Shown: positions 1 through 21,112 of the stretch, one piece after another
Layout: every line of letters begins with the position of its first letter
Numbering within the stretch: position 1 is the first letter of the stretch
Source: Convolutriloba macropyga
Lineage: Eukaryota
DNA length: 64,000 bases
Assembly (NCBI RefSeq): GCF_964194025.1
Contig: NC_134472.1
Location: 48,422,001 to 48,486,000, forward strand
Reading direction: 5' to 3'
The notes under the pieces: generated by a model
What the model was told of the DNA's origin: nothing
What the model saw: only the letters and a program-made list of their open reading frames with translations
Database searches by the model: none
Translations under genes and position numbers: made by a program

Positions 1-998
1 ACTAATCTTCCATATGGTGGTACCATAGGAGTGTCTACTTTGAATTGTATATTTCCTTGTACGTTTTCTAGTCTTTTTTGTAATGGTGGGTTTGATAAGT
101 AATTGAATGATATGTTATGCCGTGTTGGCCTATATTTTGTATTTTTAAGGACGTTAATTCTGGCGAGTTCGTTACGAACTTCGTCTGGGTCCAAGATTTT
201 CGTTCTTCGTGCATCTGATACGTAATAGCTCGGTCTGTTTGCTCTAATGTAATGAGTGTGTTGTGAACACCATTCTACTTTTTCTTTGATCGTTCCTGTA
301 ACAGCATATGCTTTAATCTCTACAGCTTGTGCTTTTGATAATAATTGAACTTCTGTTTTTGTCATTTCTAAGTCTAACGGTTTAAATTTACATGTGCTGA
401 TTTTGTTCAGTTCGTAGTATTTTACGTTTGTTATTTCTTCTGCGTCGCAGTCGTAATGTTCGATAAAAATGTCTTGAGGTCCTACTGCTGATCCATTAAT
501 GTTTTGTCCTTTCAATTCAACGTAATCTTCTTTTGTCTGTCGTTTGTTTCTTTTATTATTTAGTTGGAATTTTTCCAAAATACTGTCTGTTAATTGTTCT
601 CTGTAAAAATTCCAATTTCGTGTCCATTTATCTATGGCTATTTCCCACATTTGTTCGTAATCTGTACTATTCTTGAATTCTTTTAAGTCTGGTGATGTAT
701 ACTTTGATGGTAATTTGTATATTTCCGTTTCAAATTTTGTTTTGTTATTAAATACATGATCCATTAACTTGTTCAAGTTATCTTGGTCGGTTACATTTAT
801 GTTATTTGTTTTTGTTTTGTTTTTCTTTTTGAAACTTTCTATATGTTTTTCCATACGTTCTTGTATGTGTTCTTTAATTTGTTCTCTGATATTTTGTTTT
901 ATTTTATATTTTGATCTTATTTCTGTGTCTATTTTCATATAGATAAATAATGTTATTAGTAATAATATTAGTATTATGGATTTTAATTGAAGCGGCAT
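1..998 (-). CDS. env: Envelope-like fusion glycoprotein, N-terminal 332 aa (truncated by window edge)
   Basis: MPLQLKSIILILLLITLFIY hydrophobic leader; RNKR at aa 150-153; HYDCDAEEITNVKYYELNKISTCKFKP...VQLLSK...EWCSQH; N-x-S/T sequons; no stop before the edge. Confidence 0.85.
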   Translation of the reverse strand, partial: MPLQLKSIILILLLITLFIYMKIDTEIRSKYKIKQNIREQIKEHIQERMEKHIESFKKKNKTKTNNINVTDQDNLNKLMDHVFNNKTKFETEIYKLPSKYTSPDLKEFKNSTDYEQMWEIAIDKWTRNWNFYREQLTDSILEKFQLNNKRNKRQTKEDYVELKGQNINGSAVGPQDIFIEHYDCDAEEITNVKYYELNKISTCKFKPLDLEMTKTEVQLLSKAQAVEIKAYAVTGTIKEKVEWCSQHTHYIRANRPSYYVSDARRTKILDPDEVRNELARINVLKNTKYRPTRHNISFNYLSNPPLQKRLENVQGNIQFKVDTPMVPPYGRL

Positions 999-2479
999 GT
1001 GTATGATAGTCCTGTGTGGGGATTATAGAATGTTGCAAATCCTAAAGTTTGTTTTGTATATCTGTCAAACTTATAAACAAAGTCAATACAAATAAACGGT
1101 GCTGGTGTCGTTGTTGTCACTATAGATGGTGTTGTTGCATGAAATGGATGATTGAATATCGTATCGTATTTAATCGTTGTGTTAAATTTTAGTTCTAGAG
1201 ATGGTGTTGCTAGAACTTCAAGTGCTGAATTTCGTTGGCGATGTGTTAGGTTTAAGGTATTTGTAAGTCTACTTCTTGACCAATTTGTGAGAGTATCTCC
1301 AAGATTAGTTGGTCCGTATAATGGTGGAGGTGGATTCCAGGTTTTATAATCTAGTGTAAAAAGATATGTATGTTCATTAATTCTACTTAAAGTTGGTGGA
1401 TTTGGATTTAGTACTGGTGTTGATCTAGTTCTACCGGGGTGACTTGATGCTAATCTTAATTCGGGTATAAATGATGCTGGTGAGAGTATTGTACTTCGTG
1501 GTGGTTGTAGAGAGTTTGTTACTTCTACTCGTGGTGCGCTGACTGAGGTGTTCGAGGAGGAAGATTGTTGTGATCTATTTGGTGTAGTGTTCGTGCTTAT
1601 CGTATTTTGCGGTGAAGTTGCTGACCAAACTGAACTATGTGGTGAGTGTACTGGTTGTACACGAAAATTGTCTTGTACGAAATTGAAATCTTGTCTTTGT
1701 TGAAATGTAGGTGGTAAAAATGGGTTAGCTCGAAGTTCTGATGCTGTTGGTGTTGGAATAGTATTAACACTTGAATGATCGCTAGGTGAACTGATATTAA
1801 AATTATGTAGTGTTGGTGTTCGGGTTGGTGTTCCGGTTGGTGTTCCGGTTCGACTTGGTGGTTCTGATTGTTCTGCTCCTATAGGTCTTATTATGTTTGA
1901 TTCTATATCAGTTGATCCGTATGATACTAATGTAGATTCTTGTGTAGGAAATGATAGTGATGCTCTACGTCTGCCTCTTAGTAGATGTCGTGTATCTGTT
2001 CTTGCTCGTCTTACTGTATATGGGTTTTCGTTTTCGGGGTTTGTTTCTTCTATTTCTGGTGATGTGGGTATATTTGTTAAATCTGTTACTTCGTTGTGAT
2101 GTGGTCTTTCTGGGTGATTGTTACTATTGTTATTACTATTTGATGAAGCAATTTTTGTTGTTTTGAGATAATTTCAGGCTCCAGAACCTGGTCCGGGTGG
2201 TGGATGTTGTATGAACGGTGGGGCTAGTATAACTACTGGTATTAATTCTTGTTCTGGTTGGTATGTTTGAGCTCCTAGGTTTGTAATCCAAATTTCGTTA
2301 GTTGTTAGTCTAATATTTAGTTGATATATGACAATGTTACCATGTAATGGTGATGTGTTGGGGAATCCAATTTGGAGGTAGAACTTTTGTGTATGTACTG
2401 TATGATATATCGATTCTTCAATGTCTGGGTTGGGATCAATTTTTATGGGTTTACAAAATATTCTATTAGTCCTAAGCAC
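983..2479 (-). CDS. Accessory ORF 4: ~498-codon protein with a central S/T/P/R-rich disordered region and one in-frame TGA (2174-2176)
   Basis: The 101 aa track ORF continues in frame after its TGA for 396 stop-free codons to TAA at 983-985. Confidence 0.75.
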
Positions 2480-2622
2480 ATACGTACGAAGAAGTATATT
2501 ATAATTGCAATTTTTATAAATTTAAATATTTCTAATTCGACAATATCTATGTTTGTTTTACATATGTGGTAAATATCGGAGTGGGTTTCATGCATCGGGT
2601 TACTGTACTGGTGGGCTTGCAT
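2443..2622 (-). CDS. Accessory ORF 3: 59 aa small membrane protein
   Basis: MQAHQYSNPMHETHSDIYHICKTNIDIVELEIFKFIKIAIIIYFFVRMCLGLIEYFVNP*, just under the track cutoff. Overlaps both neighbouring ORFs. Confidence 0.45.
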   Translation of the reverse strand: MQAHQYSNPMHETHSDIYHICKTNIDIVELEIFKFIKIAIIIYFFVRMCLGLIEYFVNP

Positions 2623-2809
2623 ATACGACTCGGCGGTTGCTTATAACTTCGCTTATTGTTACAATAGTTAAATATGTCGATATTATTACAATGCAAGGTA
2701 CTAGGAGTATTGTTAGGAAGAATATTACTTTAGATAGTATAAAGTAGATTGTTATTAAGGATTCGTTGAAATCTATTTTTGAAACTGGTAAATAAAATGT
2801 GTAACTTTG
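2600..2809 (-). CDS. Accessory ORF 2: ATG-less 69-codon frame with a long hydrophobic segment
   Basis: Manual translation ...ESLITIYFILSKVIFFLTILLVPCIVIISTYLTIVTISEVISNRR...; acceptor-like TTTTATTTACCAG at 2785-2797. Confidence 0.35.
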   Translation of the reverse strand, partial: QSYTFYLPVSKIDFNESLITIYFILSKVIFFLTILLVPCIVIISTYLTIVTISEVISNRRVVYASPPVQ

Positions 2810-2993
2810 TTATTAATTATTTAAAGGTGAGGTGTAATGCTGCACTGAAGAGTGACAGTTATTTGCTCAATTGTAACTCTCACTTAACCGTGCCGCACTA
2901 CAGATATTATTATACAGTATTTATCTGTAGAATACTATTACAATTACTGGTATCATATCCTAAAGAATGTGTTACAAAATATTTGTTAGAGTT

Positions 2994-3485
2994 TTACTCT
3001 GTGGTTTTATCGTCAAGAGGTGTTGTATCGTCTATAAGTGTTATAGCGTCTTTTTTACATACAACTATAAAAACTGTTTTTAGTTTGTTAAGGTCAATAC
3101 ATTGATCTGTTTGGATCTGTTGTTTCAGTAAGCTATACTCTGTGATTGTTTCGTTACAAATGGTTATGTGTTTTAGTAATTCAAAATGTTTTTCTCCCCA
3201 AAATAGTTTTGCTTCTTGTCCGCTTTCTGTTTTTCCTTCAATTATAAATAAACAATCTTTATCGGAGAATTTACAAATTGTTGTTCTTATACTATCGTTA
3301 TCAAAATGAATGTGGTTTCCAAATGAGTAATCTAATTTTGCAAAGTTTTCTCTTTGGACTTGGATTTTTATACAAAACTGTTTTCTGTTCAAAGAGTGCA
3401 AAAACTCTGACACTTTTATCATTGGTGGTTTTTCATCACTGTGGTGACTGTAGTGATGGATTAATCTTTCGGAGAAGAAATTCAA
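2994..3485 (-). CDS. Accessory ORF 1 of retroelement, unknown function (163 aa; frame open from ~3560)
   Basis: Same strand as gag-pol, globular-looking composition, TTG start, preceded by a pyrimidine-rich tract on the minus strand. Confidence 0.6.
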   Translation of the reverse strand: MNFFSERLIHHYSHHSDEKPPMIKVSEFLHSLNRKQFCIKIQVQRENFAKLDYSFGNHIHFDNDSIRTTICKFSDKDCLFIIEGKTESGQEAKLFWGEKHFELLKHITICNETITEYSLLKQQIQTDQCIDLNKLKTVFIVVCKKDAITLIDDTTPLDDKTTE

Positions 3486-4546
3486 ATAGTTTAATGCGTT
3501 GTTAAAAGGATTCAGTTTACCTGGTGTTGTTGAATTGTTGAGTGAAAAGGATAAATGAAAGAGTTATGACAAATATGAGAAAAGTTATGAAAGAGGTTAT
3601 GAAGTGATACAAAATGAATTTCTTTTTGAGATAGAATATTTTTAGTCTTAAGACTAAATTTTGTATTTGTGGAGTTTAGAATTTTCATCTTAGCTTAGTT
3701 TTTTCGCAAATTTTTTCAGATTTTTGAACAAGTTTTAACGGTTGTGGTTTGTGCGAGGCAAAATCAGAATTGTGATTTTTACTTTCTTTTCGAAGGCTCT
3801 CTATAATGTTGGTGACATTTTTATATCTTCCGTTTTTCATTTTTTGGATTTTAAGTTGTCAGTTTCAATAATTACTGGGTCCAATTATGGTGTTAGTTTC
3901 CTCGTTTGATGAATTGGTTACTCTTCTGATTTTTACGATACTCTTGGTTCTCGAGATTTTGTTTTCCTTGTAATTTGTATATTGACATGTGTCTGATGGT
4001 TAGATGGTGTGCTTTCATCATGGTATGTTAATTCTTTCTTGGTGCCAACTATATGGTATCAATAAGCTTAGTTTGTTGTTTCTCTGCCAATTATGCTATT
4101 TCTTCTGTTTTGAAGTGTTCTCCCTATCATTAGGATGGTTAGTTAGTGATGGTTGGTGGCATTAGCGGGATGGTTAGTGGTGCCAGTTCTTACCAATTAG
4201 TTTGGTACTTTTTGGTCTAATTAGCTATATGGTATGTCTGTTGTATGCCTTTGATGGTGCAACTCTGCAGATGGTGCAACTCTGCAGATTTTAATTATTG
4301 CCATAAACGAAGTATTGACGTAGTTTAAATGTTTATTTCATCTACTAATGATCTTAGTAAGACCTGTCTTGTTTAATCACCATTGTGTTAGGTGAAAATG
4401 TTGATTGGTATGTTTTTGTTACTAATTGCGTCTGCATAGAGACTGTTTGTCTCTAACGTTCGTTGTTTAAGATATCTTTGTTGATGGTGTCAATTTGGTA
4501 TTTTCTTCCCTTTAATTGGTTTTAGTTTTAGTTTGGATTTTTAAAG

Positions 4547-4727
4547 ATAACGTCCGTTTCTTTACTAATGATGTCTGTGACATTTTAGTTGTTGGCGTTT
4601 GTTAGAATAATAATGTCCGTATTTTCACTAATGAGATATATAACGTCCGTATTTTCACTAATGAGATGGATAACGTCCACATTTTGCACTAATGAGGTGT
4701 ACTAATGAGGTGTATGACGTCCGTTTT
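4547..4727. repeat. ~30 bp degenerate tandem repeat (TAACGTCCGTATTTTCACTAATGAGAT)
   Basis: About five copies visible. A separate 17 bp tandem duplication GATGGTGCAACTCTGCA lies at about 4253-4288. Confidence 0.85.
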
Positions 4728-6009
4728 TAAATGACATATATTAGTGTGACGTATATTCCGGTTTTTGCAAAGTGTATTGCAAAATATGTTAAATGTTCAT
4801 TTCGCCGAATGTGTTGTAAGCCGAATGTTTTGTTACGTTGGCTAAGCTTATAAATGATAATTGGCGGTTTCATTGATCATGTTCATGGAACGTGTGAAAG
4901 ATCTGTATTGGATGTGAAGTGAAACATGTATTCTTGTGTTTTAGATGTTGTTGAATGTGCGATGAAGATATCCTATTGTGTTATGGAAGACGTATTTGCA
5001 ATGATGTATTCGGATCCCTATATTATCTCAATAGCACGTTATGCTAGTCATTACAGACTGTTATTCGTATTTGCTTTCGTCCACTTATTTGTTCTTAATT
5101 TCCGTCCTTCGTTTATACGGTCATTATGCCACGGTGTACATTAATTGTGTTTACATCGTTAGTTTAATTAGTTCTGTTTCCTTATTTTCATCGTTTTCCT
5201 ATGTAGTTAGTCATCACTGTTATTTGTAATATACTTTTCCCTTTCTGTAATCCTCAAATAGGATATGTGAGTAGAATTGTTAACAATTTCGAAGTATCTA
5301 TTCCATTTCGAGAGTGTTTACGTTATTATAACACTCTTGTATCTTTGATTATTTGATCTTTGTTACTACTGTTTGTTTATCGTAGATATCAACTATCTCA
5401 TAACGTCTATTCCAGTTCAAAGCTTTTGAACATTTAAAACATACTTTTTGTTACTTGAATTATTGTGTTACTTGCTTTCTTGTTTACATGAGAATTTACC
5501 CGTGTTAATCTTTAGACGGGGTTTCATGGGCTACTATCAATACCCATTTGTTTTAGTATATCCTGTATGGATATTATCATTTGTTATTTGTATATTTGTT
5601 TATTGTTTTGATGAAAATGTATGGAAGCGATGTGTGATGGGGATGTATGCTGTTGTCAGTTAGTACAGACTCTTCGGTTTTGGACATTGTCAGTACAGAA
5701 ATGTGTCGGTAAACATTAACTGTTACAACTTTTTATGTGTCTTTTCCCTTTTTTGTCTTTTATAAATGTTTATCCATGTTACTAAAAGGTGTTAGTGGTG
5801 TAAGTTAATAATTGTTATAACTCAATTAGTCTTTTCATTAGTTGAAATATAGTGGATACATTTGAGGTGATTTATTTAAGTTCTATGGGTGAGAGGTTAT
5901 GTAGATTGGAGCACCTTTTAGTAATGCTCTTTTTATATTTGTTCTGTTTATTATTTATAATTTTAGTGTAATTCTAATTTATATGTTTTGTTTTATCTTT
6001 TGATAGTGT

Positions 6010-6064
6010 GGGGGGGGGGGTTATGACACACAAGGTTCGGGTTAGGGGGTTTTGTGTGTGTCAT
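6010..6064 (-). other. Hairpin plus C11 tract in post-integrase spacer
   Basis: ATGACACACA (6023-6032) pairs with TGTGTGTCAT (6055-6064); G11 run at 6010-6020 on +. Confidence 0.6.
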
Positions 6065-6355
6065 GTATAAATACTGAACATACTATGTATATTGGTGAAA
6101 TACTGAACATAAACTAAAGATGGAACTAGTGAAATGAATAATTTATAGCAGTTTAACTGTTGTATCGCTGTCTGCAATGATATTACTGTGCCAGCTGAAT
6201 CATTAGTTGTAGAATAAGTATTTGTAGGCTAGTTTAGTCTATTGCACTAGTTATTTAGTATGGATTTACGGTACTATAGCATTATTAGTTGTATTATTAA
6301 TATTATTATTATTATTATTATTATTTATAGTAAAATTTTCTCGAGGGGATTGTTA

Positions 6356-7867
6356 CTAAGGTTTTGGAATTGTTATTTTCTTCTTTCGAAGATTGTAACT
6401 GTGAGATCGTGTGATCTCATCAGGTTGTATATAATTCTTGGATTTTTGTTGAGTATTGGGTTGTTTTAAGATTGGGATTTCATTTGTCAATAAGTAATTT
6501 TGTAATTCTAGTTTAATGTGTTTTTCTTTCGGAAAGTATGGTACAATATGATTTCTATGTATTGTAATGTGTTTATCAGTATTGTCCTTCAGTATGTATG
6601 TTGTTTCTGTGGGTTTATCAACAATTAAATATTGTCCTGTTTTTAGAGGTAATAGTTTCTTTGATACTCCGTCAATCTGTTGTTGATTTGTGATCAAGAC
6701 GAATGTGTTTTTATCAAGTGGTTTCGCTGTTCTGAACCTTGAATTTAATTCATCAGTTAACCTTTTTCTGTTTCGTAATATTTTTGTTATGGTTTGATAT
6801 GTGTCATTATAATGTTTTTCTTTGTCAAGAAACCATTTTGCAAACGTTCCGTTTTGTAGTTTTGCTATTTTTGGGTGACTGAATTGTTTATCTAAGTGAG
6901 TATGTGCGGGTTGTGTTTTGCATGCGCTTGTTCTTGTTGGGTTACAGTTTCCCATCTCGTCTGTAGTTGTTCCAAGTTTAATCTTTGTTGGTTTTCTTGG
7001 TTTTTGGTTGAAAACAACTTCATAAGGTGACATGCCTAATCTTGTCTGGTATTGCGTATTATATGCATACGGAAAGAATTTTGCTTTTCTAGACCAGTTT
7101 TGGTACTTTTCGTTGAGTAATGTTCTGATAAATTGTCCAATTATTTTATTAGTTCCTTCCACTAGTCCGTTTGTCCAGGGTGCATATGTTGTGCTTGGTT
7201 TAAATTTGATTTCAAAGTAATTACAAAGGTGTGTTAATTCTGTATTTATATATTCCGATCCGTTATCGGAACGAATTTCTTCGGGTAGTCCGAATTTCAT
7301 AAACCAATGTTCAAATAATGCTGTAACTGCGTAGTGTGCATTGTTCTGAGGCGCACACATTATTGTTACGTAATGTGAGAATGCGTCTACTATCACAAAG
7401 ATAAAATTATTTCCTTCAGATGTAGGATGTATTGGACCTTTTGTGTCTATCATAATCATTTCATTAAAGTATGTTTTTGTAGGTGCTAATTGTTCTTGCT
7501 TACTTTTTGTTTTTGTGTTAGCGAAAACTTTGTTTGTTTGACATTGTATGCAGTCTGCGATCAGTATCTTGATCCAAGTTGTTAAGTTTGGGAAGTAATA
7601 TTTTTCCATTATGTTTCTTTTTGTTTTTTCAAGTCCCGTGTGACCAACTGTATCTACGCAATGGTTTTCGTAAAAAACACATAATAGTAATGTTAGTGGT
7701 AAACAGATTCTTTCTTTTGTTTGTTTTTTTATTCGAATAATCATTTTCATTATGTTAGTTTTTTCGTCAATTGTAATTGATTTAAACTTTCTGTAATACG
7801 CGAATAGTACTTTATTTCCGCGTATGTCCATTGTTACTGAATGTGGTTTATTGTTATTTTTTTCCAC
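6356..7867 (-). CDS. pol: Integrase (HHCC + DDE), joined to RT-RH by an A-run frameshift near 7860
   Basis: H-x6-H...C-x2-C zinc finger; IDTKG, SDNG and GLVE catalytic residues; GQY-type C-terminal module. Confidence 0.95.
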   Translation of the reverse strand: MEKNNNKPHSVTMDIRGNKVLFAYYRKFKSITIDEKTNIMKMIIRIKKQTKERICLPLTLLLCVFYENHCVDTVGHTGLEKTKRNIMEKYYFPNLTTWIKILIADCIQCQTNKVFANTKTKSKQEQLAPTKTYFNEMIMIDTKGPIHPTSEGNNFIFVIVDAFSHYVTIMCAPQNNAHYAVTALFEHWFMKFGLPEEIRSDNGSEYINTELTHLCNYFEIKFKPSTTYAPWTNGLVEGTNKIIGQFIRTLLNEKYQNWSRKAKFFPYAYNTQYQTRLGMSPYEVVFNQKPRKPTKIKLGTTTDEMGNCNPTRTSACKTQPAHTHLDKQFSHPKIAKLQNGTFAKWFLDKEKHYNDTYQTITKILRNRKRLTDELNSRFRTAKPLDKNTFVLITNQQQIDGVSKKLLPLKTGQYLIVDKPTETTYILKDNTDKHITIHRNHIVPYFPKEKHIKLELQNYLLTNEIPILKQPNTQQKSKNYIQPDEITRSHSYNLRKKKITIPKP

Positions 7868-9618
7868 ATTTTGACTTTATGAAGTACTGGATCTATTATT
7901 TGTGTTTCTTTAATCAACTCTTCTGTTACTTTTGTTTTTTCATCATAGAAAATATTTGTTATTTTTGCATGGTCGAAATTTTGTTCTTGTTTTACATTGT
8001 TGATTAATCTAAGATAGTCATCGTCATGATGAGTTATGTATGGTCCTTTTTGGTTTTTCTCTATGATTAAGTCATCTTTTTCAACAATTGGTGATTGCCA
8101 GTTTTTTGTTTTTGGTTTATATTTCGGTACTAAATTTGTTTTTGTTTCGGTATTATATTTTTCATATGATATCGGATGGTATTCGTTTTTATCAATGTTA
8201 ATTTCAAAGTAGTTGTTGTGTATGTTGGCTAGAACTGGATAATGTGTTGTGTCTTTGTTATCGTTGTTTGTATTGTTGCAAATGCTGTATTTGCATTCTA
8301 GGTTATTTGCAAATGGTGTTTTTGCAAAGAAGAATTTTATGTTTTCAGGTATTTCCACTGTAATATCACGTGTTTTTGTAAAATGTTCTTCATCTATTGT
8401 TCTACTGAGTAGATCTGGTAAAGCTAGGTTTTTCCCTTCAGTCCATATAATATGTAAGTTAGGAAATTTCATTAGTATCAATTGAAATCTGTAAACTCTA
8501 TGGTTTGGTTTATTCTTTTGTGTGAAAAGGTAAATGATTGGCTTATGATCTGTAAATAAAATAATTGGGTGATTTGAACCTGTTAATAAAAATTCGTATT
8601 CTGTGAGTGCGAAAATAATCGCTGAACATTCTCTAATTAGTGTAGATAGTCTCATTTCAATCGGTGTGAAAAGTCTAGAATTTGCTGATATTAATCGCAT
8701 TTTCTTTTCAGTTGGATGTTGTTGCAGTAATGCTGCTCCAATGCCTGTGTTGGACGCATCTGTTATAATGTAAAATGGTTTTGTTGTATCTGGTATTGTT
8801 AATTCTAGGTTATGTGTTATTGTTTTTTTCATTTGTTCAAATATTTTTTGATGTTCTTTAGTCCATTTGAAATCATTTTCTTTGTGTAATAGATTGTATA
8901 ACGGTTGTAATATTGGTTGCATTCCATAGACGTATTTGGCTAAGAAATTTATTGTTCCGAGGTATCGTTGTAAAGCTTTCATACTTGTTGGAGGTTCCAA
9001 TTTTTGGAATCCATCAATTCGTGATGTAAGTGGTTTTACTTTTTTGTCTTCGATAATGTGACCTAAGAATTTTACTTTCTTTAACATGAAGTATGTTTTA
9101 TCGGGTGCTGCTTTGAGATTTTCTTTAAGCAGTACTTTATGATATTCGATTAGTGTTTCAAACATTTGGTCATAAGAATTTGTTTGTATAAAGATATCGT
9201 CTACGTAAGTGATAACTGTTCCTTTTCTGATCAAAGTGTAAAGGAAATGTGTTAGTATTGATGCAAATGCTGCTGGTCCGATTGATATTCCGTAGAATAA
9301 TCTTTTAAAACAATATTGTTCGTTTCCAATTGTGAAATGTGTATATCTCATCGATTCTTCGTCTAATGGTATTTGGTTATATGCACTATTAAGATCTGCT
9401 GTTGTGAATATTGTTCCGTTTATTCTTGTTAAAGCTACATCAACTGGTTCAATTGGCCAGTTGCACTTTGATTCATCTATCATGCTGTTCAAATATCTTG
9501 CGTCTAGTACAATTTTTAAAGATTCTCCTTTTCGCAGTATTATTACCGGGTTTGTGAATGTATTTCCTGTTGATAGTTGTTCTTTATTTACAGGTGCAAT
9601 TATGTCATATTTTTTGAG
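7834..9618 (-). CDS. pol: Reverse transcriptase + RNase H + extra C-terminal domain (frameshifted fragment)
   Basis: KIVLDARYLN, DLNSAYNQ, RLFYG, YVDD, KFLGH, TDAS, RECSA, TDHKP and PDLLSR motifs. Confidence 0.95.
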   Translation of the reverse strand, partial: LKKYDIIAPVNKEQLSTGNTFTNPVIILRKGESLKIVLDARYLNSMIDESKCNWPIEPVDVALTRINGTIFTTADLNSAYNQIPLDEESMRYTHFTIGNEQYCFKRLFYGISIGPAAFASILTHFLYTLIRKGTVITYVDDIFIQTNSYDQMFETLIEYHKVLLKENLKAAPDKTYFMLKKVKFLGHIIEDKKVKPLTSRIDGFQKLEPPTSMKALQRYLGTINFLAKYVYGMQPILQPLYNLLHKENDFKWTKEHQKIFEQMKKTITHNLELTIPDTTKPFYIITDASNTGIGAALLQQHPTEKKMRLISANSRLFTPIEMRLSTLIRECSAIIFALTEYEFLLTGSNHPIILFTDHKPIIYLFTQKNKPNHRVYRFQLILMKFPNLHIIWTEGKNLALPDLLSRTIDEEHFTKTRDITVEIPENIKFFFAKTPFANNLECKYSICNNTNNDNKDTTHYPVLANIHNNYFEINIDKNEYHPISYEKYNTETKTNLVPKYKPKTKNWQSPIVEKDDLIIEKNQKGPYITHHDDDYLRLINNVKQEQNFDHAKITNIFYDEKTKVTEELIKETQIIDPVLHKVKMWKKITINHIQ

Positions 9619-11248
9619 ATAAGTTTTTGTATTCGTTCTCGAAGATGTATAGGTACTTTACTTATTCTTTGTTTTTTGAATATTGCATCTTTTTTTATTG
9701 GTAAGTTCAATTTTACTTTTGTTTTTCCTACGTCAAATTTTGTTGTTGCGTAGACTTGTCTATAATCAAATATGATTTTTACTACTTTTTCAAATTCTTC
9801 TTGTGTTAAGTGTGAATGTTGAAAATCAAACATTGTTATGAATTCTTTTTCTTGTTCTGAATATTTGTTAATATTAAATTTGCATTTGAAGTTTGGTTTT
9901 CTTTCAAATGTTGCGACTTGTTCAATAGTTTCGTTTTCTTGTATGTTTAATATTTCATCGATATCGTTTTCATTTTCGTATGTCAGATGGTATAGTGCTT
10001 GGAATAAGTCGATAGAGTTTGTTTGGTATAGTTCGTTATCTTGTTTTTTGAAGCTAATATTTCTGTTCATGAAACCAATGAGCCCTGTATTTATTGTTAT
10101 TCGGTGTCTATTTTTGTTGATCAATAGTATGTCCATAAAGTATTCTTCGTCTGAGGAAAAATCCTTTATGTCTGTAAATGATACGTTATGATATTTCTTT
10201 ATTGGTTCGAAATAGAATTTCGATTTCTGTATTGTTTTTTCATTTGAGTGTTTCATTTGTTCAAATATTGGTATTGGGAATGTTATGCTTTTCTGTTGAT
10301 TTGGTTCTATATAGATTGTTCCTCTATTAATGATTGTGTATAATCGAGAGTAGTAAAGATAACCTTTAGTACTATTCATGTAGAATATAATATCGTTGTC
10401 TAAATTTGTATTTGTATTTAATGTTAGTTTGTTGGTATTAACATTTATCGTCTCGATATATTCTTTGAAGAATGGTGTACCCAATATATTATGATTGCAT
10501 TGTGTTACATAGAAGTGAATGCAAAAAGTGGTTTGTGGTTTGTTTCTATTGTTAGAAATTCTGTCTGGTGTTAAATTCAGTGTTACTGTTCCGAATGTGT
10601 CTATTTTTGTATTATTTTCAGCTGTTAGTGTTTTGCTTGCTTTGTCCAAGATCATTTCTGGGTTATTGTATTTGATTTCATTCCATGTATCTTCATTTAG
10701 TAAGTTTAATGTTGCTCCTGAATCTAATAGGAAATCTATTTCTAACATAGGTTTTTGTTTTGTAAAGTCCTGTTCAAATTTCTGATATTGATACATTGGT
10801 AATATCCATGTTGGGTTGCTTTCTAATGTATTTATTACAGTATTGCATGTACCTTCATTGGCATTGTAAAATTTATCTAGTATTTCTTGATCTTCGTCTG
10901 AGGACTCTGATGTGTACTCATATTCGTCGAATCCTGGTGGATCGTTATTTGCTTTTTCTTGTCCTACGCTATTTATTCGGTTTTTGCTATTGTTGTTTCC
11001 ATCATTTCTCCGTTCTTTTGAATAATGTCTGTTATTTTGTTCTCGTTGGGATGAGTATCCTCTATTATCTCTGTTATTGTTATTTGAATGATTTCTATTG
11101 TTACTATTAGAACGTTGTCTATAGTTATCGTTTCTATTTGAATCTCTACTGTTGTATCTTTGTCGATTATTATTATTATTGTTTTTGTTACTATTATAAG
11201 GTGATTGTTGTCTTGAATTATTTCTGTCATTGTATCTTGAATTTGATC

Positions 11249-11282
<34 letters not shown>

Positions 11283-11645
11283 GTATTTGTTATAGCTGTT
11301 GCTTCTATGATAACTGTTGCTTCTGTTTCTATTGTAGTTATTCCTGTTATAACTAGTACTTCTGTTATTATAATTATTTGATCTTTGATATCCTTGATTG
11401 TTTCTACTATCTCTGGAATGTCTATTATGGTAGTTATTTCTTGAATGTGATCTGTATGGTGTCCGACTTCTGGAGTTGTTATATATTGGTGATGTCGGTG
11501 GTAGTTGTCTGCCATTGACATTATTTGAGTCAATTCTTCTATTTGGTAAGTTTTGATTGTTTCTCATGTGACTGTAGAATGATCTTTCTTTCGGTCTTGT
11601 AACACTACCTCGACGTGGTCTCTTGAAACATCTTCCCTTTGTGTG
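9600..11645 (-). CDS. pol: Gag-Pol continuation: N/R/S-rich linker, aspartic protease, probable degenerate dUTPase-like domain, start of RT
   Basis: In frame with gag across the TGA. Contains FLLDSGATLNLL and NILGTPFF (protease) and IFKKQRISKVP (RT start). Frameshift near 9615. Confidence 0.88.
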
Positions 11646-14039
11646 TCAATGTGTGCTACAATAGCTACAAAACAGTGCAAACTTTGGTCTTCCTTTAAAA
11701 TTCTTTTTGTCATATGTATTGTTAATTCCGTTTAGAACATTGCATATTGTTCCTTCGAATTGTTCTAAGTCGTTTTGATTAAGTTCATTTATATTATTAC
11801 AGGCTATATTCATTTGTTTTAGATCTTCATTAATATTTGTTGTACTCTGGTTTACTTCATATAATCTTTTGTGATTATTAGTTATTGTTCTTGTTAGATC
11901 CATTTGGTCTATTTTCTCTACTAATGTTTTGAATGGCATTTCTGGTTCTCGTGGAGTTTGTTTGTGGTTTGCATGTTTCTTTAATGCTGCGTTTTTTAAT
12001 TCGTTGTCTAAACATCTTATGAACGTTTGGTTCATAACACTATTTCTGTAATCTTCTGTGTATAGAGAATAAGCAGTTTTGACAAGAGTTTCTATTCTTA
12101 ACGCTAATGATCTGAGTGATTCGTTTGTATGTTTTTGTAATTGTTGTAATATGATTTTTGCTTGTTGTTTTGATTTTTCCGAATCAAACATATCTGAAAA
12201 TTCTTTGCAAAATGTTTCCCAATCTAATTTTGTTTCACTTGGAAGTGTCGAATACCATTTTTGTGCAGGTCCCTGTAAAGTATGTAGTATTAACGCTGCT
12301 CTTTTTACTTTCCATTGGTGATGTCCTGGTTTATTTACCGGTTCAATGCCACTGCTGAATATCATAGCAGCGACAATGCTATTTAAATATTCTTCAACGG
12401 TATATGCTGGGTCTGTTCCATCGAATGGTCTTATTGTTGTTGGTACTGAACCACTGCTAATGTTTTGTTCAATTTGAGGGTCTTCGTTTATGCTCATTGA
12501 TGTTAATTGTTTATAAAATGGTAGAGGTGGTTCTACTACTGTTGTTTCCCTTTCTTCTGTTGTGATTGAATTTGTTCTTCTATTTTGATTTCCTTGTTGT
12601 TGATTACTATGTCTATCAGTATTTTGTATGTTTTCATTTGTTGTATGTTCATGGTTTCTGTTATGAAAAGGATTTTTTTGGTTTCTGTTATGTAATGGAT
12701 GTTCGTATTCCGTTCTATAGTTATTTTGTCCTTGTAGATTGTCAAGAGTTCTATCCAATTTATTGATAACCATTTCTAGTGCTTCTTCTTGTCTTTTTTC
12801 CATATTTTGGCTCATTCGATGATATTTTTCTTCTAGGTTATTTATTAATTTATTAGTATGTTTTGTTACTGTTTGTGTAATTTCGTTTTTTAAGTCTTCA
12901 TAATTATATTGTTGTTGTTGCCAATTTTGTTCTTGGTTTCTATATTTGTTATCTACCGAGTTGATGTACATTCTGTTGCTGTTAATTTCGTCCTTGTTTT
13001 GGTATTTTCGTCTGTTTTGGTTTACCGATGGTGGAAATTGATTGTCAGATCTAATTTCTCTTTCATCTGAATCAGAATTGTCTACATCTTCTATTGTATT
13101 ATTGTTGTTTCCGAATAAATTTGATGTTAATAGTTTATCTGGTTTTATTGTTGATTTTTGTTTTACTTGTGAATTGTTGCTCAGTTGTGTATCTTTTGGT
13201 GTTGACGTTGATGTTGAACTTTTTGTTATATTAAATGATGATGATCCTGATTGTCCTTGATCCAGTATTTTCACGTAATTTTCCAATCCTTCAATGAAAT
13301 TAATACTGTCTGAACTGATCTGTAAAGTACTTTCAAAATTTTCTGAACAATATTCTTTATCCCAAATATTTTTGAGTTCATCACAGAGATATCCTATTTC
13401 GTTAGGATATGTCTCTCCGAACTGTATTCGTTTTTCGTTTATATGTTCAAAATTGTCTAACCAAAAGAGGAAAGTAAATTCAGATACTATTTTTATGATA
13501 TCTATTGAAGCTGTTTTTATTTCTGGTTTTAGTTCTATTATTTTTGTCAACCAATTATTATAGTTTTTGATGTCAAATCTTAATCTGTCATTCACAGACT
13601 GTACCTGTTGACGACTTTCATTGAGATATCCACTTGTGTTTCTTATTATGTTGTATGTTGTGGATGTTATTGCTGTTTGTTTTGTTCTATCCTGTGATTC
13701 TTCATGTCTTTTTAAAAATATTTTTAGCATTTCCGATAATGTTGTTTCATTTTGGAAATTAAAATATGTTCTTCTGTTGTTATTTTCATTTGTTAATACA
13801 AATGTATAGTTTTTGTTGTATCTATCACTATTCAGTAGTATTACTGGTAGATAGTGTGTCAAATGGTTGCGGTTGATTTTGATTTGTTGTATATGATCTG
13901 TTTCTTTGAAGAGGTTTCTCTTCAAATTTATGATTATTCTGTAATTTAATTCTGTATTTTCTTGTGGACAATCATTTGCGATAACAAAAGGTGTTAATTC
14001 GTTATTATGGTTTGATTGTGTATCAAATTTGGAAGCCAT
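11646..14039 (-). CDS. gag: Gag (long N-terminal extension, capsid domain, CCHC knuckle broken by TGA)
   Basis: 797 aa ORF with FDGTDP..VEEYL, LQGPAQKWY, DWETFCKEF and LQKHTNESL. It ends CSYCSTH*HTKGRC and the frame stays open into 11567. Confidence 0.9.
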   Translation of the reverse strand: MASKFDTQSNHNNELTPFVIANDCPQENTELNYRIIINLKRNLFKETDHIQQIKINRNHLTHYLPVILLNSDRYNKNYTFVLTNENNNRRTYFNFQNETTLSEMLKIFLKRHEESQDRTKQTAITSTTYNIIRNTSGYLNESRQQVQSVNDRLRFDIKNYNNWLTKIIELKPEIKTASIDIIKIVSEFTFLFWLDNFEHINEKRIQFGETYPNEIGYLCDELKNIWDKEYCSENFESTLQISSDSINFIEGLENYVKILDQGQSGSSSFNITKSSTSTSTPKDTQLSNNSQVKQKSTIKPDKLLTSNLFGNNNNTIEDVDNSDSDEREIRSDNQFPPSVNQNRRKYQNKDEINSNRMYINSVDNKYRNQEQNWQQQQYNYEDLKNEITQTVTKHTNKLINNLEEKYHRMSQNMEKRQEEALEMVINKLDRTLDNLQGQNNYRTEYEHPLHNRNQKNPFHNRNHEHTTNENIQNTDRHSNQQQGNQNRRTNSITTEERETTVVEPPLPFYKQLTSMSINEDPQIEQNISSGSVPTTIRPFDGTDPAYTVEEYLNSIVAAMIFSSGIEPVNKPGHHQWKVKRAALILHTLQGPAQKWYSTLPSETKLDWETFCKEFSDMFDSEKSKQQAKIILQQLQKHTNESLRSLALRIETLVKTAYSLYTEDYRNSVMNQTFIRCLDNELKNAALKKHANHKQTPREPEMPFKTLVEKIDQMDLTRTITNNHKRLYEVNQSTTNINEDLKQMNIACNNINELNQNDLEQFEGTICNVLNGINNTYDKKNFKGRPKFALFCSYCSTH

Positions 14040-14166
14040 TTGTTATTCTTTGAATTTTAATCCGTTCTGTTTTTCTAACAATAGTTTTTGTTATATCCCT
14101 CAGAAATTATAATTGTTTACCCAATTTAGTTCAGCACTGGTCGCACCAGATAAGACGTGTTCTAGA

Positions 14167-14243
14167 GCTTACCTTTGTTAGGGTACTTTCTGAACTGTCT
14201 TATGGTTGTCTCAAGAATACTAGTTAATCTTAAGGCTTACCTG
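14167..14243 (-). promoter_or_regulatory. Two consensus 5' splice donors in the leader (CAG|GTAAGC at 14240; AAG|GTAAGC at 14172)
   Basis: Near-perfect donor consensus located between PBS and the gag ATG. Confidence 0.5.
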
Positions 14244-14301
14244 ACTAACTAAAGTTCTATTCCTCTAGTCTGTTACTCTTCTATCTGAGCTTCAGTAGAC
14301 G

Positions 14302-14316
14302 GTGCACGGGCCCCAA
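14302..14316 (-). promoter_or_regulatory. Putative primer-binding site (TTGGGGCCCGTGCAC), possibly tRNA-Pro-like
   Basis: Immediately follows the LTR-terminal CA. Matches 10/13 positions of the usual tRNA-Pro PBS TGGGGGCTCGTCC. Confidence 0.45.
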
Positions 14317-14767
14317 TGCTACGGTCTAACGTTTATCTCAATACAAAACAAGAGCGGAGTAGAGAGAGAGAAATATACTCTATTATTAAATCAGGATGGT
14401 AACTGGTACTGACTAAATTACTTTCTCTTCTGCTGAGAGAGGGTAGATGGGTAAACACATAAAGGAAAAGGAGGATAAAATAATATATCATTTTTATCCA
14501 ATCAGGAAAGAGTATTTCAGTCTTTTTCTGAATAAAGTCTTTCAAATATTAAATATTCTTTTTTGGAAGTCATGCCTGACTCCAAGGTCGCGCTGGTTTC
14601 GTTGTTTTTCTTGTTTTTTCATTGTTTTTGTTTTTTGACACTTCTTGTCCTACGTTTTCGGCACTACGTTTTTCTAGTCTATTGCTGTTTTGCGCATGTC
14701 GTGCTCTACGTTTTTTAAATTGTGCAATGTTGACTTTTCCTCTGTTATAGATGGTTTGGATGCAGCA
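14317..14767 (-). repeat. Putative 5' LTR (~450 bp)
   Basis: Minus strand starts TGCTGC (14767) and ends GTAGCA (14317), an imperfect TGCT..AGCA inverted pair. It is followed by a PBS-like motif and the compositional skew ends here. The partner LTR is outside the window, so boundaries are unconfirmed. Confidence 0.55.
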
Positions 14768-19500: not shown

Positions 19501-21112
19501 GCTCTTAAATAACGTAAAATTTATTTTGAGAGAGACAAAATGTCATTTTGAGAGTAGGGTCAGTTATATTTGACCGGAGAAGAGCTTCAGGTTAAAAAAA
19601 GTAATTACCAAGAGTTGATTTGGAACGAGGGTGACAATATATGTTGAGAACAAAAACACTTGGCGAATAAATACAGACGTATTAGGACAGCTCATGAAAT
19701 ATAATCCAACAAAATGTATGAAAGAAAAAAATATTCATTCCTTATTCTGACTAAGAGACTAATTGAACATTGCAAGCTACTCAGTATTTTCACAAAAGTA
19801 GAGAAAAATTTTAAAAAACTTCAAAAAATGAAGAAAAAGGGGACTTTTAAAGTAAATGAAGTAATGAAGTAATGAAGAAAAATTTAAAGTAAAAAAGGGA
19901 ACTGAAAAATTGGGTATAACAAAGTTGTGGTCTGACATATAGTGACAAGCAGATATACGCGAAAACACCGAAAACTGTCGACAAATGTAAAATTAGCAAA
20001 AAACGGGAAAAAACTGAAAAATGCGCTACTAAAGGCAACAATGAGTCTCTAAAGCATCTTTTTGAACTGAGCGTGCAGTCTTTTCATCTAGTTTTGAAAG
20101 CTCAAAGTAAACTAAAAAAGTGAGTGAACACATCTTCAAAAAGACAGTGCCATTCATTCCAGACTCTCTGGACTGCAAAATCCTCGAGAGAGACAACAAT
20201 AGATACTCTTCTTTTGCAGCTTACCGAATAACTAATTATTGAAAAACTAATCTGTGTAAATTTATTTTGAGTTTATTTGACAACTTCAACTATTTTAGGG
20301 CTGCCTCAGTCTGATATGGGCTGTATTTAATGCGGAAATCAAAATTATATTTCCAAATTTTAAAAACCAAATTTTAGCTTCTGCGTTTCAACCTCATTGT
20401 TTCTAAGCTAAACAATGGAGCAACATTTTCCGCTTAGATTACGACGGAGATCATGACAATCGATTTGCAAATTACAGATCAACATCTCTAGATCACTCTT
20501 TCATCAAGGACAACGAACGGAGTACTAAAGGTAAAAAACATTTATTAATAGATATTTTACGTCCCCATAAATAGACCACGTCATAAATTTACCACCTTAA
20601 CCTTGTAAATGTTAGTTGTTGTAATACTAGTCTCATCTTTTCATTCATTATTAATACAAAAATAGGCTTTATTTCATGAAATTTTTAGTTATATAAGAAA
20701 AATTGTCATCGACTTTGATGGAAAACCCTAAAAAATAAAATATATATGATTTTTTTCGCTTCAGTGTAGTTAATTCTTGATGCAATTAGTTTTTGAAAAA
20801 TCTTTATTTTCGAAAAACGTCAGTTTAATTAATATTTGAATTTTTCATACATTTTTACCCGAGTTAGAAATGACAACAACTGTTACGTTTTTCACTTTGA
20901 GCTGAATTTTTTCAGTAAAAGTTACGATTCCATTCATTCTCTGTACGAAAAGCACCGGAGAAAGTATCAAATCTTATGTATCCAACGGCACCCACTTCAA
21001 GATTCTCTTCTCCAACGGAGGTGTTTATGGAGCTGAGCTGAGGATTCCCCGGGTTAAGGTCCTCAATGATAGCCACCCTAGATTAGAAAATCTAGATTGT
21101 ATTCAACTATAA
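16575..21112 (+). CDS. Secreted protease-associated (PA) domain protein, 3 exons (16575-17034, 20438-20530, 20916-21112), ~249 aa
   Basis: Signal peptide; KGSIAMVGRGGCQMIEKAKAAE..GLIII in exon 1 and VTIPFILCTKSTGESIK in exon 3; GT-AG phase-1 junctions join into one open frame. Confidence 0.82.
17505..19720 (+). repeat. Diverged intronic direct duplications (17505-17820 ~ 18395-18705; 17970-18340 ~ 19320-19720)
   Basis: Shared blocks such as AGAGCATTTAAATGTCCA.ACTTTTGGCGTTA and GAGAGA.AAAATGTCATTTTGA. Confidence 0.75.

What the first reader, a model, noticed from the sequence alone, without database searches (positions are those of the whole stretch)
1..998. Gypsy-type retroelement carries an env resembling chuvirus/Monjiviricetes class III fusion glycoproteins
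Seen: a stop-free 332-codon minus-strand frame from ATG 998 to the window edge, absent from the ORF track. It has a hydrophobic leader, N-glycosylation sequons, RNKR (aa 150-153) and then HYDC-x15-C...VQLL...WC. Established: the best-known errantivirus env is baculovirus-F-like, whereas YDC...C...QLL...C N-terminal motifs typify chuvirus-like glycoproteins, some captured by BEL/Pao elements. Inference: this is an independent capture of a class III-type fusogen by a PR-RT-RH-IN (Metaviridae-type) element, making it a potentially infectious endogenous virus.
Basis: partly seen in the sequence, partly recalled or inferred. Interest (0 to 1): 0.92.

Follow-up and report, generated by a model that had tools for sequence, protein, structure and literature searches.

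The report
Envelope gene of giant gypsy retroelement
The stretch is the first third of the envelope gene of a young, 21-kb retrovirus-like mobile element in an unidentified animal genome. The envelope is a distant relative of chuvirus/rhabdovirus-type fusion proteins, a combination already published for other animals, but this element is unusually large and carries extra conserved genes.

Summary
Window 1-998 (minus strand) holds codons 1-332 of an env gene: hydrophobic leader, six sequons, RNKR at aa 150-153, HYDC at aa 181. This fragment passes Pfam's own threshold for PF24664 Monjiviricetes_fusion (30.2 bits against 27).

The same locus lies on a public ENA contig that is 99.4-99.8% identical. 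There the ORF runs 1137 aa and scores 52.9 bits in two colinear stretches. It has one furin-type site, a C-terminal membrane anchor and a tail of about 250 aa. It sits inside a 21,107-bp element with 434-bp LTRs (2 mismatches), a 4-bp target duplication and a PBS-like site. The RT is closest to Ty3.

The fold evidence is weak because both AlphaFold models were poor, but all the best Foldseek matches are class III glycoproteins and none is F-like.

This kind of element is already published: Ty3/gypsy elements with gB-type or chuvirus-like env occur widely in metazoans (eLife 2026). "Independent capture" is untested and looks unlikely. This copy's pol carries two frameshifts, so "infectious" does not hold for it. 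Sister copies have a continuous pol and intact env.

New here are the size, the 5.3-kb pol-env interval and three further ORFs, two of them shown to be under purifying selection.

The parts
1..998 (-). 5' part of env: codons 1-332 of a 1137-codon ORF, cut by the window edge
   Evidence: No stop in the window. On the allelic ENA contig the ORF is 1137 aa from the same ATG, 326/332 identical to the window part. PF24664 30.2 bits. dN/dS against sister copies 0.05-0.31.
939..998 (-). Hydrophobic leader of env (aa 1-20): signal peptide or signal anchor
   Evidence: Highest hydropathy of the fragment. Identical in L005 and conserved at residue level in L002.
552..938 (-). Pro-region of env (aa 21-149), rich in K, N and E, predicted helical, less constrained than the rest
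   Evidence: Composition; helices in the model; dN/dS 0.34-0.90. It is absent from the distant family, where a signal peptide directly precedes the HYDC region.
540..551 (-). RNKR, a furin-type R-x-K/R-R site (aa 150-153)
   Evidence: It is the only such site in the 1137-aa ORF. R150, K152 and R153 are at least 90% conserved in the alignment of long relatives.
1..539 (-). Start of the mature ectodomain (aa 154-332)
   Evidence: dN/dS 0.07-0.09 against L005 and L002. Many invariant columns including C184 and C244.
243..458 (-). Stretch aa 181-252 that aligns to positions 24-95 of Pfam PF24664 Monjiviricetes_fusion
   Evidence: E 1.6e-7, 30.2 bits, gathering score 27.
986..2173 (-). Pre-env ORF: 396 open codons, rich in S, T and P. 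No ORF of 60 aa or more with an ATG/GTG/TTG start is listed in it. It ends 12 nt after the env ATG, in another frame
   Evidence: 90% aa identity to L003 where the DNA is 79% identical. dN/dS 0.13-0.30. The C-terminal 120 aa are still 39% identical in the distant family L004, again ending at the env start.
2177..2521 (-). 115 open codons upstream of the pre-env ORF, in the same frame here but in other frames in relatives; relation to it unresolved
   Evidence: dN/dS 0.21-0.31.
2997..3563 (-). ORFx: 189 open codons, a conserved gene of unknown function between pol and env
   Evidence: dN/dS 0.13-0.16 against L001, L002 and L003. No Pfam or PDB match.
3564..6355 (-). Interval after integrase with no long open frame, poorly conserved between families
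6356..11645 (-). pol region (candidate protease, RT, RNase H, integrase). Broken: two frame changes relative to copies with a continuous ORF
   Evidence: Pfam RVT_1, RT_RNaseH, RT_RNaseH_2, Integrase_H2C2 and rve. Best PDB match is Ty3 RT, 4ol8, E 8e-35. Weak Asp_protease_2 hit with a D-S/T-G motif inside it. The continuous ORFs of L005 and L010 map to the window in three frames.
11646..14039 (-). gag, an open 797-aa ORF
   Evidence: Pfam Retrotrans_gag 34.8 bits. The identical product is on the ENA contig. No CCHC knuckle found.
14135..14148 (-). PBS-like sequence starting TGG, 2 nt after the 5' LTR
   Evidence: No tRNA in the window to match it to.
14151..14584 (-). 5' LTR, 434 bp, termini TG...TA
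   Evidence: 99.5% identical (2 mismatches) to the 3' LTR on the allelic contig, L009 17014-17447. 98-99% identical to the LTRs of L005 and L010.
14585..14588 (-). Target-site duplication ACCT (5' copy)
   Evidence: The same 4 bases follow the 3' LTR on the allelic contig.

Best explanation
Window 1-998 is the first 332 codons of the env gene of a young, 21.1-kb Ty3/gypsy-type LTR retroelement (an endogenous retrovirus-like element) in an unidentified metazoan. The order is LTR, PBS, gag, pol, ORFx, pre-env ORF, env, post-env ORF, LTR. Env is a distant member of the glycoprotein family of Monjiviricetes (chuvirus/rhabdovirus type, class III fusogens). Shown: the sequence features, the family membership, the position inside the LTRs, purifying selection, and many intact copies. 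Inferred mechanism: the hydrophobic leader takes the protein into the ER. A furin-type protease cuts after RNKR and removes an N-terminal pro-region of about 150 aa. The glycosylated ectodomain of about 680 aa is held by a C-terminal membrane anchor with a long cytoplasmic tail. On budding particles it would mediate membrane fusion and so cell-to-cell spread, as in other env-carrying gypsy elements. This particular copy is not autonomous as assembled, because its pol carries two frame changes. The association of env with the element looks old rather than a recent capture.
For: Pfam PF24664 is above its gathering score for the window fragment (30.2 against 27). For the full ORF of the same locus it scores 52.9 bits, E 2e-14, with two colinear stretches. 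Longer relatives also match profile positions 311-493, and 6 of 44 fragments match independently. No other Pfam family appears at E <= 0.05, so no Baculo_F, herpes gB or Rhabdo_glycop family. Foldseek with the model of a 74%-identical relative gave 7 BFVD hits at E <= 1e-3, of which the five that carry a name are glycoproteins of negative-strand RNA viruses (xinmo-, rhabdo-, chu-like). The top 24 PDB hits are all class III fusogens. A membrane anchor lies at about aa 833-860 and there is a single R-x-K/R-R site; the anchor is also seen in L001 and L004. LTR pair, TSD and PBS. Ty3-like RT. Env is colinear with pol in six further loci. dN/dS is 0.07-0.09 in the ectodomain part. The 90%-identity cluster of this env has 531 members, many of 1116-1124 aa. 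L010 has RT-RH-IN in one 1304-aa ORF plus an env of 1118 aa.
Against: There is no confident 3D model: pLDDT was 58 and 47, and the G-like part was below 50. Foldseek TM-scores are only 0.10-0.16 and no PDB hit is significant. The model of the window fragment itself found nothing. The Pfam alignment covers only about 240 of 653 profile positions. No fusion loops were identified. Fusion activity, cleavage and particle formation are inferred, not shown. Everything beyond window base 1 comes from an allelic contig that differs from the window by 0.2-0.6%, not from the window itself.
Confidence: 0.85

Rival explanations
1. The env was captured recently and independently by this gypsy lineage from an exogenous chuvirus-like virus.
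For: The env falls in a Pfam family built on Monjiviricetes glycoproteins. Captures of this kind are documented for mosquito BEL/Pao 'Anakin' (PMC7642597).
Against: phmmer against 1.84 billion representatives found only copies of this element family. The top 120 of 455 profile hits all come from ENA and none has a name. No relative was found in IMG/VR or JGI metagenomes by pattern scan. A sister family in the same sample (L004) has the same pre-env-ORF, env, post-env-ORF order at about 30% env identity. The literature argues for long co-divergence of env and pol. No phylogeny was built here.
Confidence: 0.12
2. The two frame changes in pol are assembly errors in A-rich homopolymers, and the copy is in fact fully open.
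For: The coding strand is 44% A. The window and the ENA contig differ by 4 gap openings in 10.9 kb. The insertion is young (LTRs 99.5% identical), and gag and env are open.
Against: The window and the ENA contig show the same split of pol into separate ORFs.
Confidence: 0.2
3. The env-like protein is kept for something other than membrane fusion, for example receptor interference, trafficking or host use.
For: Fusion was not tested. The tail of about 250 aa and the N-terminal pro-region are atypical for rhabdovirus-type G. Several copies carry in-frame internal deletions that remove the central ectodomain.
Against: Purifying selection acts on the ectodomain between transposing lineages. The full set of leader, ectodomain and anchor is kept in many copies. 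The gene always lies inside the element.
Confidence: 0.08
4. The ORF is a free-standing endogenous viral element or a host gene that merely lies next to a retrotransposon.
For: Many chuvirus-like glycoprotein EVEs in arthropods are flanked by fragments of LTR elements without being part of them (PMC10084718).
Against: It lies between pol and the 3' LTR of one insertion with a TSD. It shares the element's strand bias. The same order recurs in six further loci of diverged families.
Confidence: 0.02

Closest known systems
Env-carrying Ty3/gypsy 'errantiviruses' with HSV-gB-type (class III) ENV (Chary & Hayashi, eLife 2026, PMC13524379)
   Same: Ty3/gypsy pol. Env lies inside the LTRs. The ectodomain is flanked by a leader or TM segment and a C-terminal TM. 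A furin site is present in some. The elements are multi-copy and young. The order is gag-pol-env, as in their arthropod, cnidarian and tunicate elements.
   Different: That survey accepted only regions up to 10 kb with a POL-ENV gap of 1 kb or less. Here the gap is 5.3 kb, holds two conserved ORFs, and the element is 21.1 kb with a further ORF after env. Whether pol falls in one of their clades was not tested.
Gypsy elements next to the Chuviridae-like glycoprotein gene (Coleoptera, Hymenoptera, Polyneoptera, Hexanauplia; same paper), and mosquito BEL/Pao 'Anakin' (Dezordi 2020, PMC7642597)
   Same: The env is of the chuvirus-like glycoprotein family and is carried by an LTR retroelement.
   Different: Anakin is BEL/Pao, whereas this element's pol is Ty3-like. 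No direct sequence comparison with those env genes could be made here, and the host is unknown.
Nematode metavirus-derived ERVs with a captured RNA-virus glycoprotein gene (Sacco et al. 2022, J Gen Virol; paper not held, known here only through citations)
   Same: A Metaviridae backbone with an RNA-virus-type glycoprotein.
   Different: Those have the order gag-env-pol; here it is gag-pol-env.
Drosophila gypsy, ZAM and Idefix (Errantivirus in the strict sense)
   Same: Ty3/gypsy elements with an env downstream of pol.
   Different: Their env is F-type (baculovirus or paramyxovirus F-like, class I). Here there is no F-family match in Pfam, and no F protein ranks among the leading Foldseek hits: none at E <= 1e-3 in BFVD and none in the PDB top 24.
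Glycoproteins of exogenous Monjiviricetes (Pfam PF24664; chu-, xinmo- and rhabdo-like viruses)
   Same: Membership by Pfam threshold; the conserved N-terminal HYDC region and the central region are colinear with the profile.
   Different: Only about 10-13% identity in Foldseek alignments. This env has an extra N-terminal pro-region with a furin site, about 90 extra residues between the matched stretches, and a very long tail. It is encoded by a reverse-transcribing element.
LTR retrotransposons with extra ORFs (e.g. bdelloid rotifer elements, Rodriguez et al. 2017, PMC5408684, abstract seen)
   Same: Additional conserved ORFs beside gag and pol.
   Different: No similarity of ORFx, the pre-env ORF or the post-env ORF to any described family was found.

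Membership tests
Ty3/gypsy (Metaviridae) LTR retroelement | Two near-identical LTRs flanked by a short target-site duplication | tested here: met
   434-bp LTRs with 2 mismatches and a 4-bp TSD ACCT. The 3' LTR was read on the allelic ENA contig.
Ty3/gypsy (Metaviridae) LTR retroelement | pol domain order PR-RT-RH-IN, with RT closest to Ty3/gypsy | tested here: met
   RT, RH and IN lie in this order; best PDB hits are Ty3 RT and Ty3 Gag-Pol, E about 8e-35. PR rests only on a weak hit (E 0.097) with a D-S/T-G motif. No phylogeny was built.
Ty3/gypsy (Metaviridae) LTR retroelement | gag with a retrotransposon capsid domain; PBS after the 5' LTR | tested here: met
   Retrotrans_gag 34.8 bits. A TGG-starting PBS-like site lies 2 nt after the LTR; the matching tRNA was not identified.
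Ty3/gypsy (Metaviridae) LTR retroelement | Canonical LTR termini TG...CA | tested here: not met
   The termini are TG...TA in the window, L005, L003 and L001. This is a common signature rather than a strict criterion.
Env-carrying gypsy with class III (gB-type) ENV, as in Chary & Hayashi | env ORF within the element, with leader/TM, ectodomain and C-terminal TM | tested here: met
Env-carrying gypsy with class III (gB-type) ENV, as in Chary & Hayashi | Class III fusogen fold of the ectodomain | tested here: inconclusive
   The AlphaFold models are of low confidence. The leading Foldseek hits are class III-type glycoproteins (all named BFVD hits at E <= 1e-3; PDB top 24), but with TM 0.10-0.16 and non-significant PDB E-values.
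Env-carrying gypsy with class III (gB-type) ENV, as in Chary & Hayashi | Compact gag-pol-env unit (POL-ENV gap <= 1 kb, region <= 10 kb), their operational criterion | tested here: not met
   The gap is 5.3 kb and the element is 21.1 kb.
Pfam PF24664 Monjiviricetes_fusion | Whole-protein score at or above the curated gathering score (27 bits) | tested here: met
   Window fragment 30.2 bits. Full ORF of the same locus 52.9 bits. Distant sister P0165 56.8 bits.
Baculovirus F / class I env (Drosophila errantivirus type) | Sequence or fold match to F proteins | tested here: not met
   No F family in Pfam at E <= 0.05. No F protein among the BFVD hits at E <= 1e-3 or in the PDB top 24.
BEL/Pao (Belpaoviridae), e.g. 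Anakin | BEL/Pao-type pol | tested here: not met
   Only Ty3/gypsy-typical Pfam families (RT_RNaseH_2, Integrase_H2C2) were found, and the best PDB hit is Ty3.
Troyka | CG...CG termini, 3-bp TSD, no env (PMC12440569) | tested here: not met
   TG...TA termini, 4-bp TSD, env present.
Non-retroviral EVE of a chuvirus | A glycoprotein gene integrated on its own, not part of a retroelement unit | tested here: not met
   It lies inside the LTR pair and is colinear with pol in all loci.

The most novel reading that the evidence does not exclude
The window samples a recently active lineage of giant (about 21 kb), genetically complex endogenous retrovirus-like Metaviridae. Besides gag, pol and a class III env, its members keep at least three further ORFs: ORFx, an S/T/P-rich pre-env ORF whose stop overlaps the env start, and a 542-aa post-env ORF. 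Purifying selection was measured for the first two; the third is conserved across families but dN/dS was not computed. Published surveys would have missed this architecture because of their size and gap filters, and it would be an invertebrate counterpart of 'complex' retroviruses.
Probability: 0.4. Interest if true: 0.6.

Novelty: new variant of a known kind. Interest (0 to 1): 0.45.

Why it matters
The kind of element (gypsy backbone plus class III, chuvirus-like env) is established, so this is not a new principle. It adds a well-preserved, young example outside the compact form that current surveys are built to find. The interval between pol and env is not junk: it holds conserved genes of unknown function. 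That matters for how env-carrying retroelements are searched for and counted. It also raises the question of what accessory genes an invertebrate retrovirus-like element needs. The large family of near-identical env copies in one genome is also good material for a better structural model of this poorly known branch of class III fusogens.

Tried and rejected
1. Sequence searches of the PDB with the fragment and with a family profile found nothing.

2. AlphaFold of the window fragment left the G-like part unfolded. Foldseek on that model gave only noise, which serves as a negative control.

3. AlphaFold of the 674-aa relative P0116 with 138 sequences was also poor, pLDDT 47.

4. The first phmmer scan returned only fragments of 282 aa or less, and the first loci showed broken or internally deleted env genes. 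That suggested a dead family. The reading was overturned by the allelic contig and the cluster look-up.

P0227 (836 aa) turned out to be the env N-terminus fused by deletion to the post-env ORF, with no membrane anchor.

6. Pattern scans of IMG/VR and JGI metagenomes found no relative.

7. The host was not identified. There is no rRNA, tRNA or other Rfam hit in the window. A host ORF search returned one unnamed ENA protein. The sample accession appears in no paper. DUF229 and PA domains say only 'metazoan'.

8. An exact look-up with the GTG-start integrase ORF failed; the ATG-start version worked.

9. I considered that the pre-env ORF is joined to the upstream 115-codon stretch by stop read-through. 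I rejected this because the two lie in different frames in all relatives.

10. I considered that the pre-env ORF and env form one ORF, since they are fused in frame in P0236 and P0059. This is unlikely because they lie in different frames in the window and in five loci.

11. BEL/Pao, Troyka and a free-standing EVE were each considered and rejected (see Membership tests).
Full report
OBSERVATION. On the minus strand, ATG 998 opens a frame that stays free of stops for 332 codons to the window edge. The ORF tool leaves it out only because it runs off the end. It has a hydrophobic first 20 residues, six N-x-S/T sequons, RNKR at aa 150-153 and HYDC at aa 181-184. With the strongly A-rich coding strand a stop is expected in 7.5% of codons. 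The chance of 332 open codons is therefore about 7e-12, and 200 shuffles of the element never exceeded 184 open codons.

WHAT THE FRAGMENT IS. Against Pfam the 332 residues give one hit: PF24664 Monjiviricetes_fusion ('viral fusion glycoprotein'), E 1.6e-7, 30.2 bits against a curated cut-off of 27. Residues 181-252 align to profile positions 24-95 of 653. On its own this is a short N-terminal match. It is strengthened by relatives:
- 6 of 44 independent fragments hit the same family.
- Longer relatives also match the central part of the profile, colinearly. P0165 aligns at 448-637 to profile 311-493 with 56.8 bits. P0167 aligns at 475-649 to 320-490. P0116 and P0099 each match in two stretches.
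- No PDB chain is similar by sequence.

THE REST OF THE GENE. The window is the same locus as contig ctg36423_56x_l (239 kb) of the ENA assembly ERZ25071359. Gag and integrase products are identical, and the DNA is 99.4-99.8% identical across 22 kb including the neighbouring host PA-domain ORF. On that contig the env frame continues without a stop to 1137 aa, counted from the window's ATG; the gene caller starts at Met21, giving 1117 aa. It is 326/332 identical to the window part.
- The full ORF scores 52.9 bits (E 2e-14) against PF24664 in two stretches, and matches no other Pfam family at E <= 0.05.
- It has a single R-x-K/R-R site (the RNKR), 12 Cys and 12 sequons.
- A hydrophobic anchor lies at about aa 833-860, followed by a tail of about 250 aa.
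- Homologous anchors preceded by an aromatic-rich stretch are seen in sister loci L001 and L004.

FOLD. Both AlphaFold runs failed to give a confident model. For the window fragment the mean pLDDT was 58, with the G-like part below 50. For the 674-aa relative P0116 (74% identical to the window part) the pLDDT was 47. The fold is therefore not established.
- The second model, searched with Foldseek (3Di plus residues), gave seven BFVD hits at E <= 1e-3. The five that carry a name are glycoproteins of negative-strand RNA viruses (a xinmovirus, a rhabdovirus, chu-like and chu-related viruses); two have no name in the tables at hand. Tacheng tick virus 4, gB and further rhabdovirus G proteins rank lower.
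- In the PDB the first 24 hits are all class III fusogens (EBV, HCMV and VZV gB; Chandipura, VSV, rabies and Mokola G; GP64), but none is significant and TM-scores are 0.10-0.16.
- No class I or F protein ranks among these leading hits.
- The unfolded fragment model gave only noise, so the enrichment is not a property of bad models as such.
I read this as consistent with class III and against F-type, not as proof.

THE ELEMENT. Upstream on the same strand lie gag (797 aa, Retrotrans_gag) and a pol region with RVT_1, RT_RNaseH(_2), Integrase_H2C2 and rve. A weak aspartic-protease hit contains a D-S/T-G motif. The RT-RNase H part is closest to Ty3 among solved structures (4ol8 and 7q5b, E about 8e-35). 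I found no sign of BEL/Pao.
- Window 14151-14584 is the 5' LTR: 434 bp, termini TG...TA.
- It differs at 2 positions from the 3' LTR on the allelic contig.
- Both ends are flanked by ACCT, and a TGG-starting PBS-like site follows the 5' LTR after 2 nt.
- The insertion is 21,107 bp long. Env lies well inside it, followed by a 542-aa ORF and about 1.8 kb before the 3' LTR.
- The coding-strand bias (A 44%, T 24%) runs through the whole element and stops at its ends.
The free-standing EVE and 'outside the LTR' alternatives are thus excluded.

STATE OF THIS COPY AND OF THE FAMILY. Gag is open, and so is the window part of env (0 breaks in 332 codons; 0 in 1137 on the allele).
- Pol is broken. Two sister copies at 97-98% residue identity, L005 and L010, carry continuous ORFs across regions that the window reads in three frames. 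That makes two frame changes.
- The same split is present on the ENA contig.
- One in-frame stop separates gag from the pol frame. Whether that is the natural read-through arrangement or a mutation is unresolved; the corresponding point is open in L010, which has a different in-frame stop (and its frame arithmetic).
- As assembled, this copy cannot be autonomous. Homopolymer errors remain possible (rival 2).

The family, by contrast, looks recently active.
- The 90%-identity cluster of this env has 531 members, many of 1116-1124 aa on different contigs.
- L010 combines RT-RH-IN in one 1304-aa ORF with an 1118-aa env.
- LTRs of different copies are 98-99% identical.
- Other copies carry large internal env deletions (L005, L003, P0227).
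- Between family lineages the ectodomain part in the window has dN/dS 0.07-0.09 and the pro-region 0.34-0.90. Env has therefore been under selection while these elements multiplied.

HOW IT MOST LIKELY WORKS. Shown: leader, pro-region, conserved RNKR (R150, K152 and R153 at least 90% conserved), a conserved ectodomain, an anchor and a tail. Inferred: the protein enters the ER through the leader. A furin-type protease cuts after RNKR and frees the ectodomain's N-terminus from the leader-bearing pro-region. The mature, glycosylated, membrane-anchored trimer then acts as a class III fusogen on particles made by gag-pol. In the about 30%-identical sister family (L004, P0165) a signal peptide directly precedes the HYDC region, so the pro-region is a lineage-specific addition. 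Chary & Hayashi describe both layouts for gB-type ENV: signal peptide plus TM, or two TM segments, with a furin site that is not always conserved.

COMPARISON WITH WHAT IS KNOWN.
[quoted passage not shown] - Sacco et al. 2022 reported metavirus-based nematode ERVs with a captured RNA-virus glycoprotein (cited; paper not held).
- Dezordi et al. 2023 had seen gypsy fragments around such glycoproteins without proving capture.
The present element is therefore a member of a known kind. It differs in architecture. That survey kept only regions of 10 kb or less with POL-ENV gaps of 1 kb or less, or looked 3 kb downstream. This element has a 5.3-kb pol-env interval and is 21 kb long.

EXTRA GENES. The interval is not empty.
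- ORFx (189 open codons) has dN/dS 0.13-0.16 against three sister families.
- The S/T/P-rich pre-env ORF (396 open codons) is 90% identical in residues to L003 where the DNA is 79% identical, with dN/dS 0.13-0.30. No ORF of 60 aa or more with an ATG, GTG or TTG start is listed in it. It ends 12 nt after the env ATG in another frame. The same 'stop at the env start' layout recurs in all five comparison loci, including the distant L004.
- A third ORF of 542 aa follows env and is conserved in L001, L003 and L004; dN/dS was not computed for it.
None of the three matches Pfam or the PDB.

CAPTURE OR OLD ASSOCIATION. No tree was built. Three things speak against a recent capture. No exogenous relative appeared in a scan of 1.84 billion representatives, in the listed top of a profile search, or in IMG/VR and JGI scans. 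The same genome holds families at about 30% env identity with the same gene order. Foldseek identities to viral G proteins are only 10-13%.

LIMITS. The host is not identified: metazoan by DUF229 and PA domains; all relatives come from one ENA sample. Everything left of window base 1 comes from the allelic contig. The fold is not established.

SLIP TO REPORT. The ORF and open-stretch listings, and my first notebook entry, hold ORF bounds inside pol. They were written before I knew that pol is broken, and those bounds bracket the frame changes. I have deleted nothing. The consensus lines printed by the alignment tool were not used.

Noticed in passing
window 986-2521 (-): S/T/P-rich pre-env ORF of 396 open codons in which no ORF of 60 aa or more with an ATG/GTG/TTG start is listed. 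It is under purifying selection and its stop lies 12 nt after the env ATG in another frame. The same overlap layout occurs in L001-L005. In two other copies (P0236, P0059) it is fused in frame to env. How it is translated (splicing, re-initiation, frameshift) is unknown.
   Followed up: partly
window 2997-3563 (-): ORFx, 189 open codons between integrase and env. It is conserved in three sister families (dN/dS 0.13-0.16) and has no Pfam or PDB match.
   Followed up: partly
L009 13606-15234 (outside the window, 3' of env): Post-env ORF of 542 aa, conserved in L001, L003, L004 and L010, with no family match. In deleted copies (L005, P0227) the env N-terminus is fused to it.
   Followed up: partly
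L003 14385-17703; L001 16427-18957: In sister copies the 3' end is a tandem array of units of about 1.1 kb, each made of the LTR plus about 670 bp of the internal sequence upstream of it. There are three units in L003 (spacing 1104 bp) and two in L001.
   Followed up: no
window 14151-14584 (-): The LTR termini are TG...TA rather than TG...CA, and this is shared by four copies of three families.
   Followed up: partly
window 1-14584 against ENA contig ctg36423_56x_l: The window is not identical to the public contig of the same locus: 99.79% over 22.4 kb including flank, but 99.43% with 4 gap openings over the 10.9 kb 3' part of the window's stretch of the element. This could be haplotypes, or assembly error in A-rich sequence.
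   Followed up: no
window 16575-17039 (+), 44130-44588 (-), 54728-55981 (-): Host ORFs or exons with a PA domain and two with DUF229/sulfatase-like domains. The DUF229 ORF has a 97%-identical copy on another contig of the same sample (L006).
   Followed up: partly
window 17512-19653: Several families of direct repeats 46-162 nt long, 65-81% identical, spaced 885-1372 bp apart, just outside the element's 5' end: a degraded tandem or dispersed repeat.
   Followed up: no
window 6281-6329 and 11228-11301: Runs of a three-base repeat (ATT/TTA on the + strand) inside the element. One lies just 3' of integrase and one inside the pol frame, where it encodes an Asn-rich stretch.
   Followed up: no
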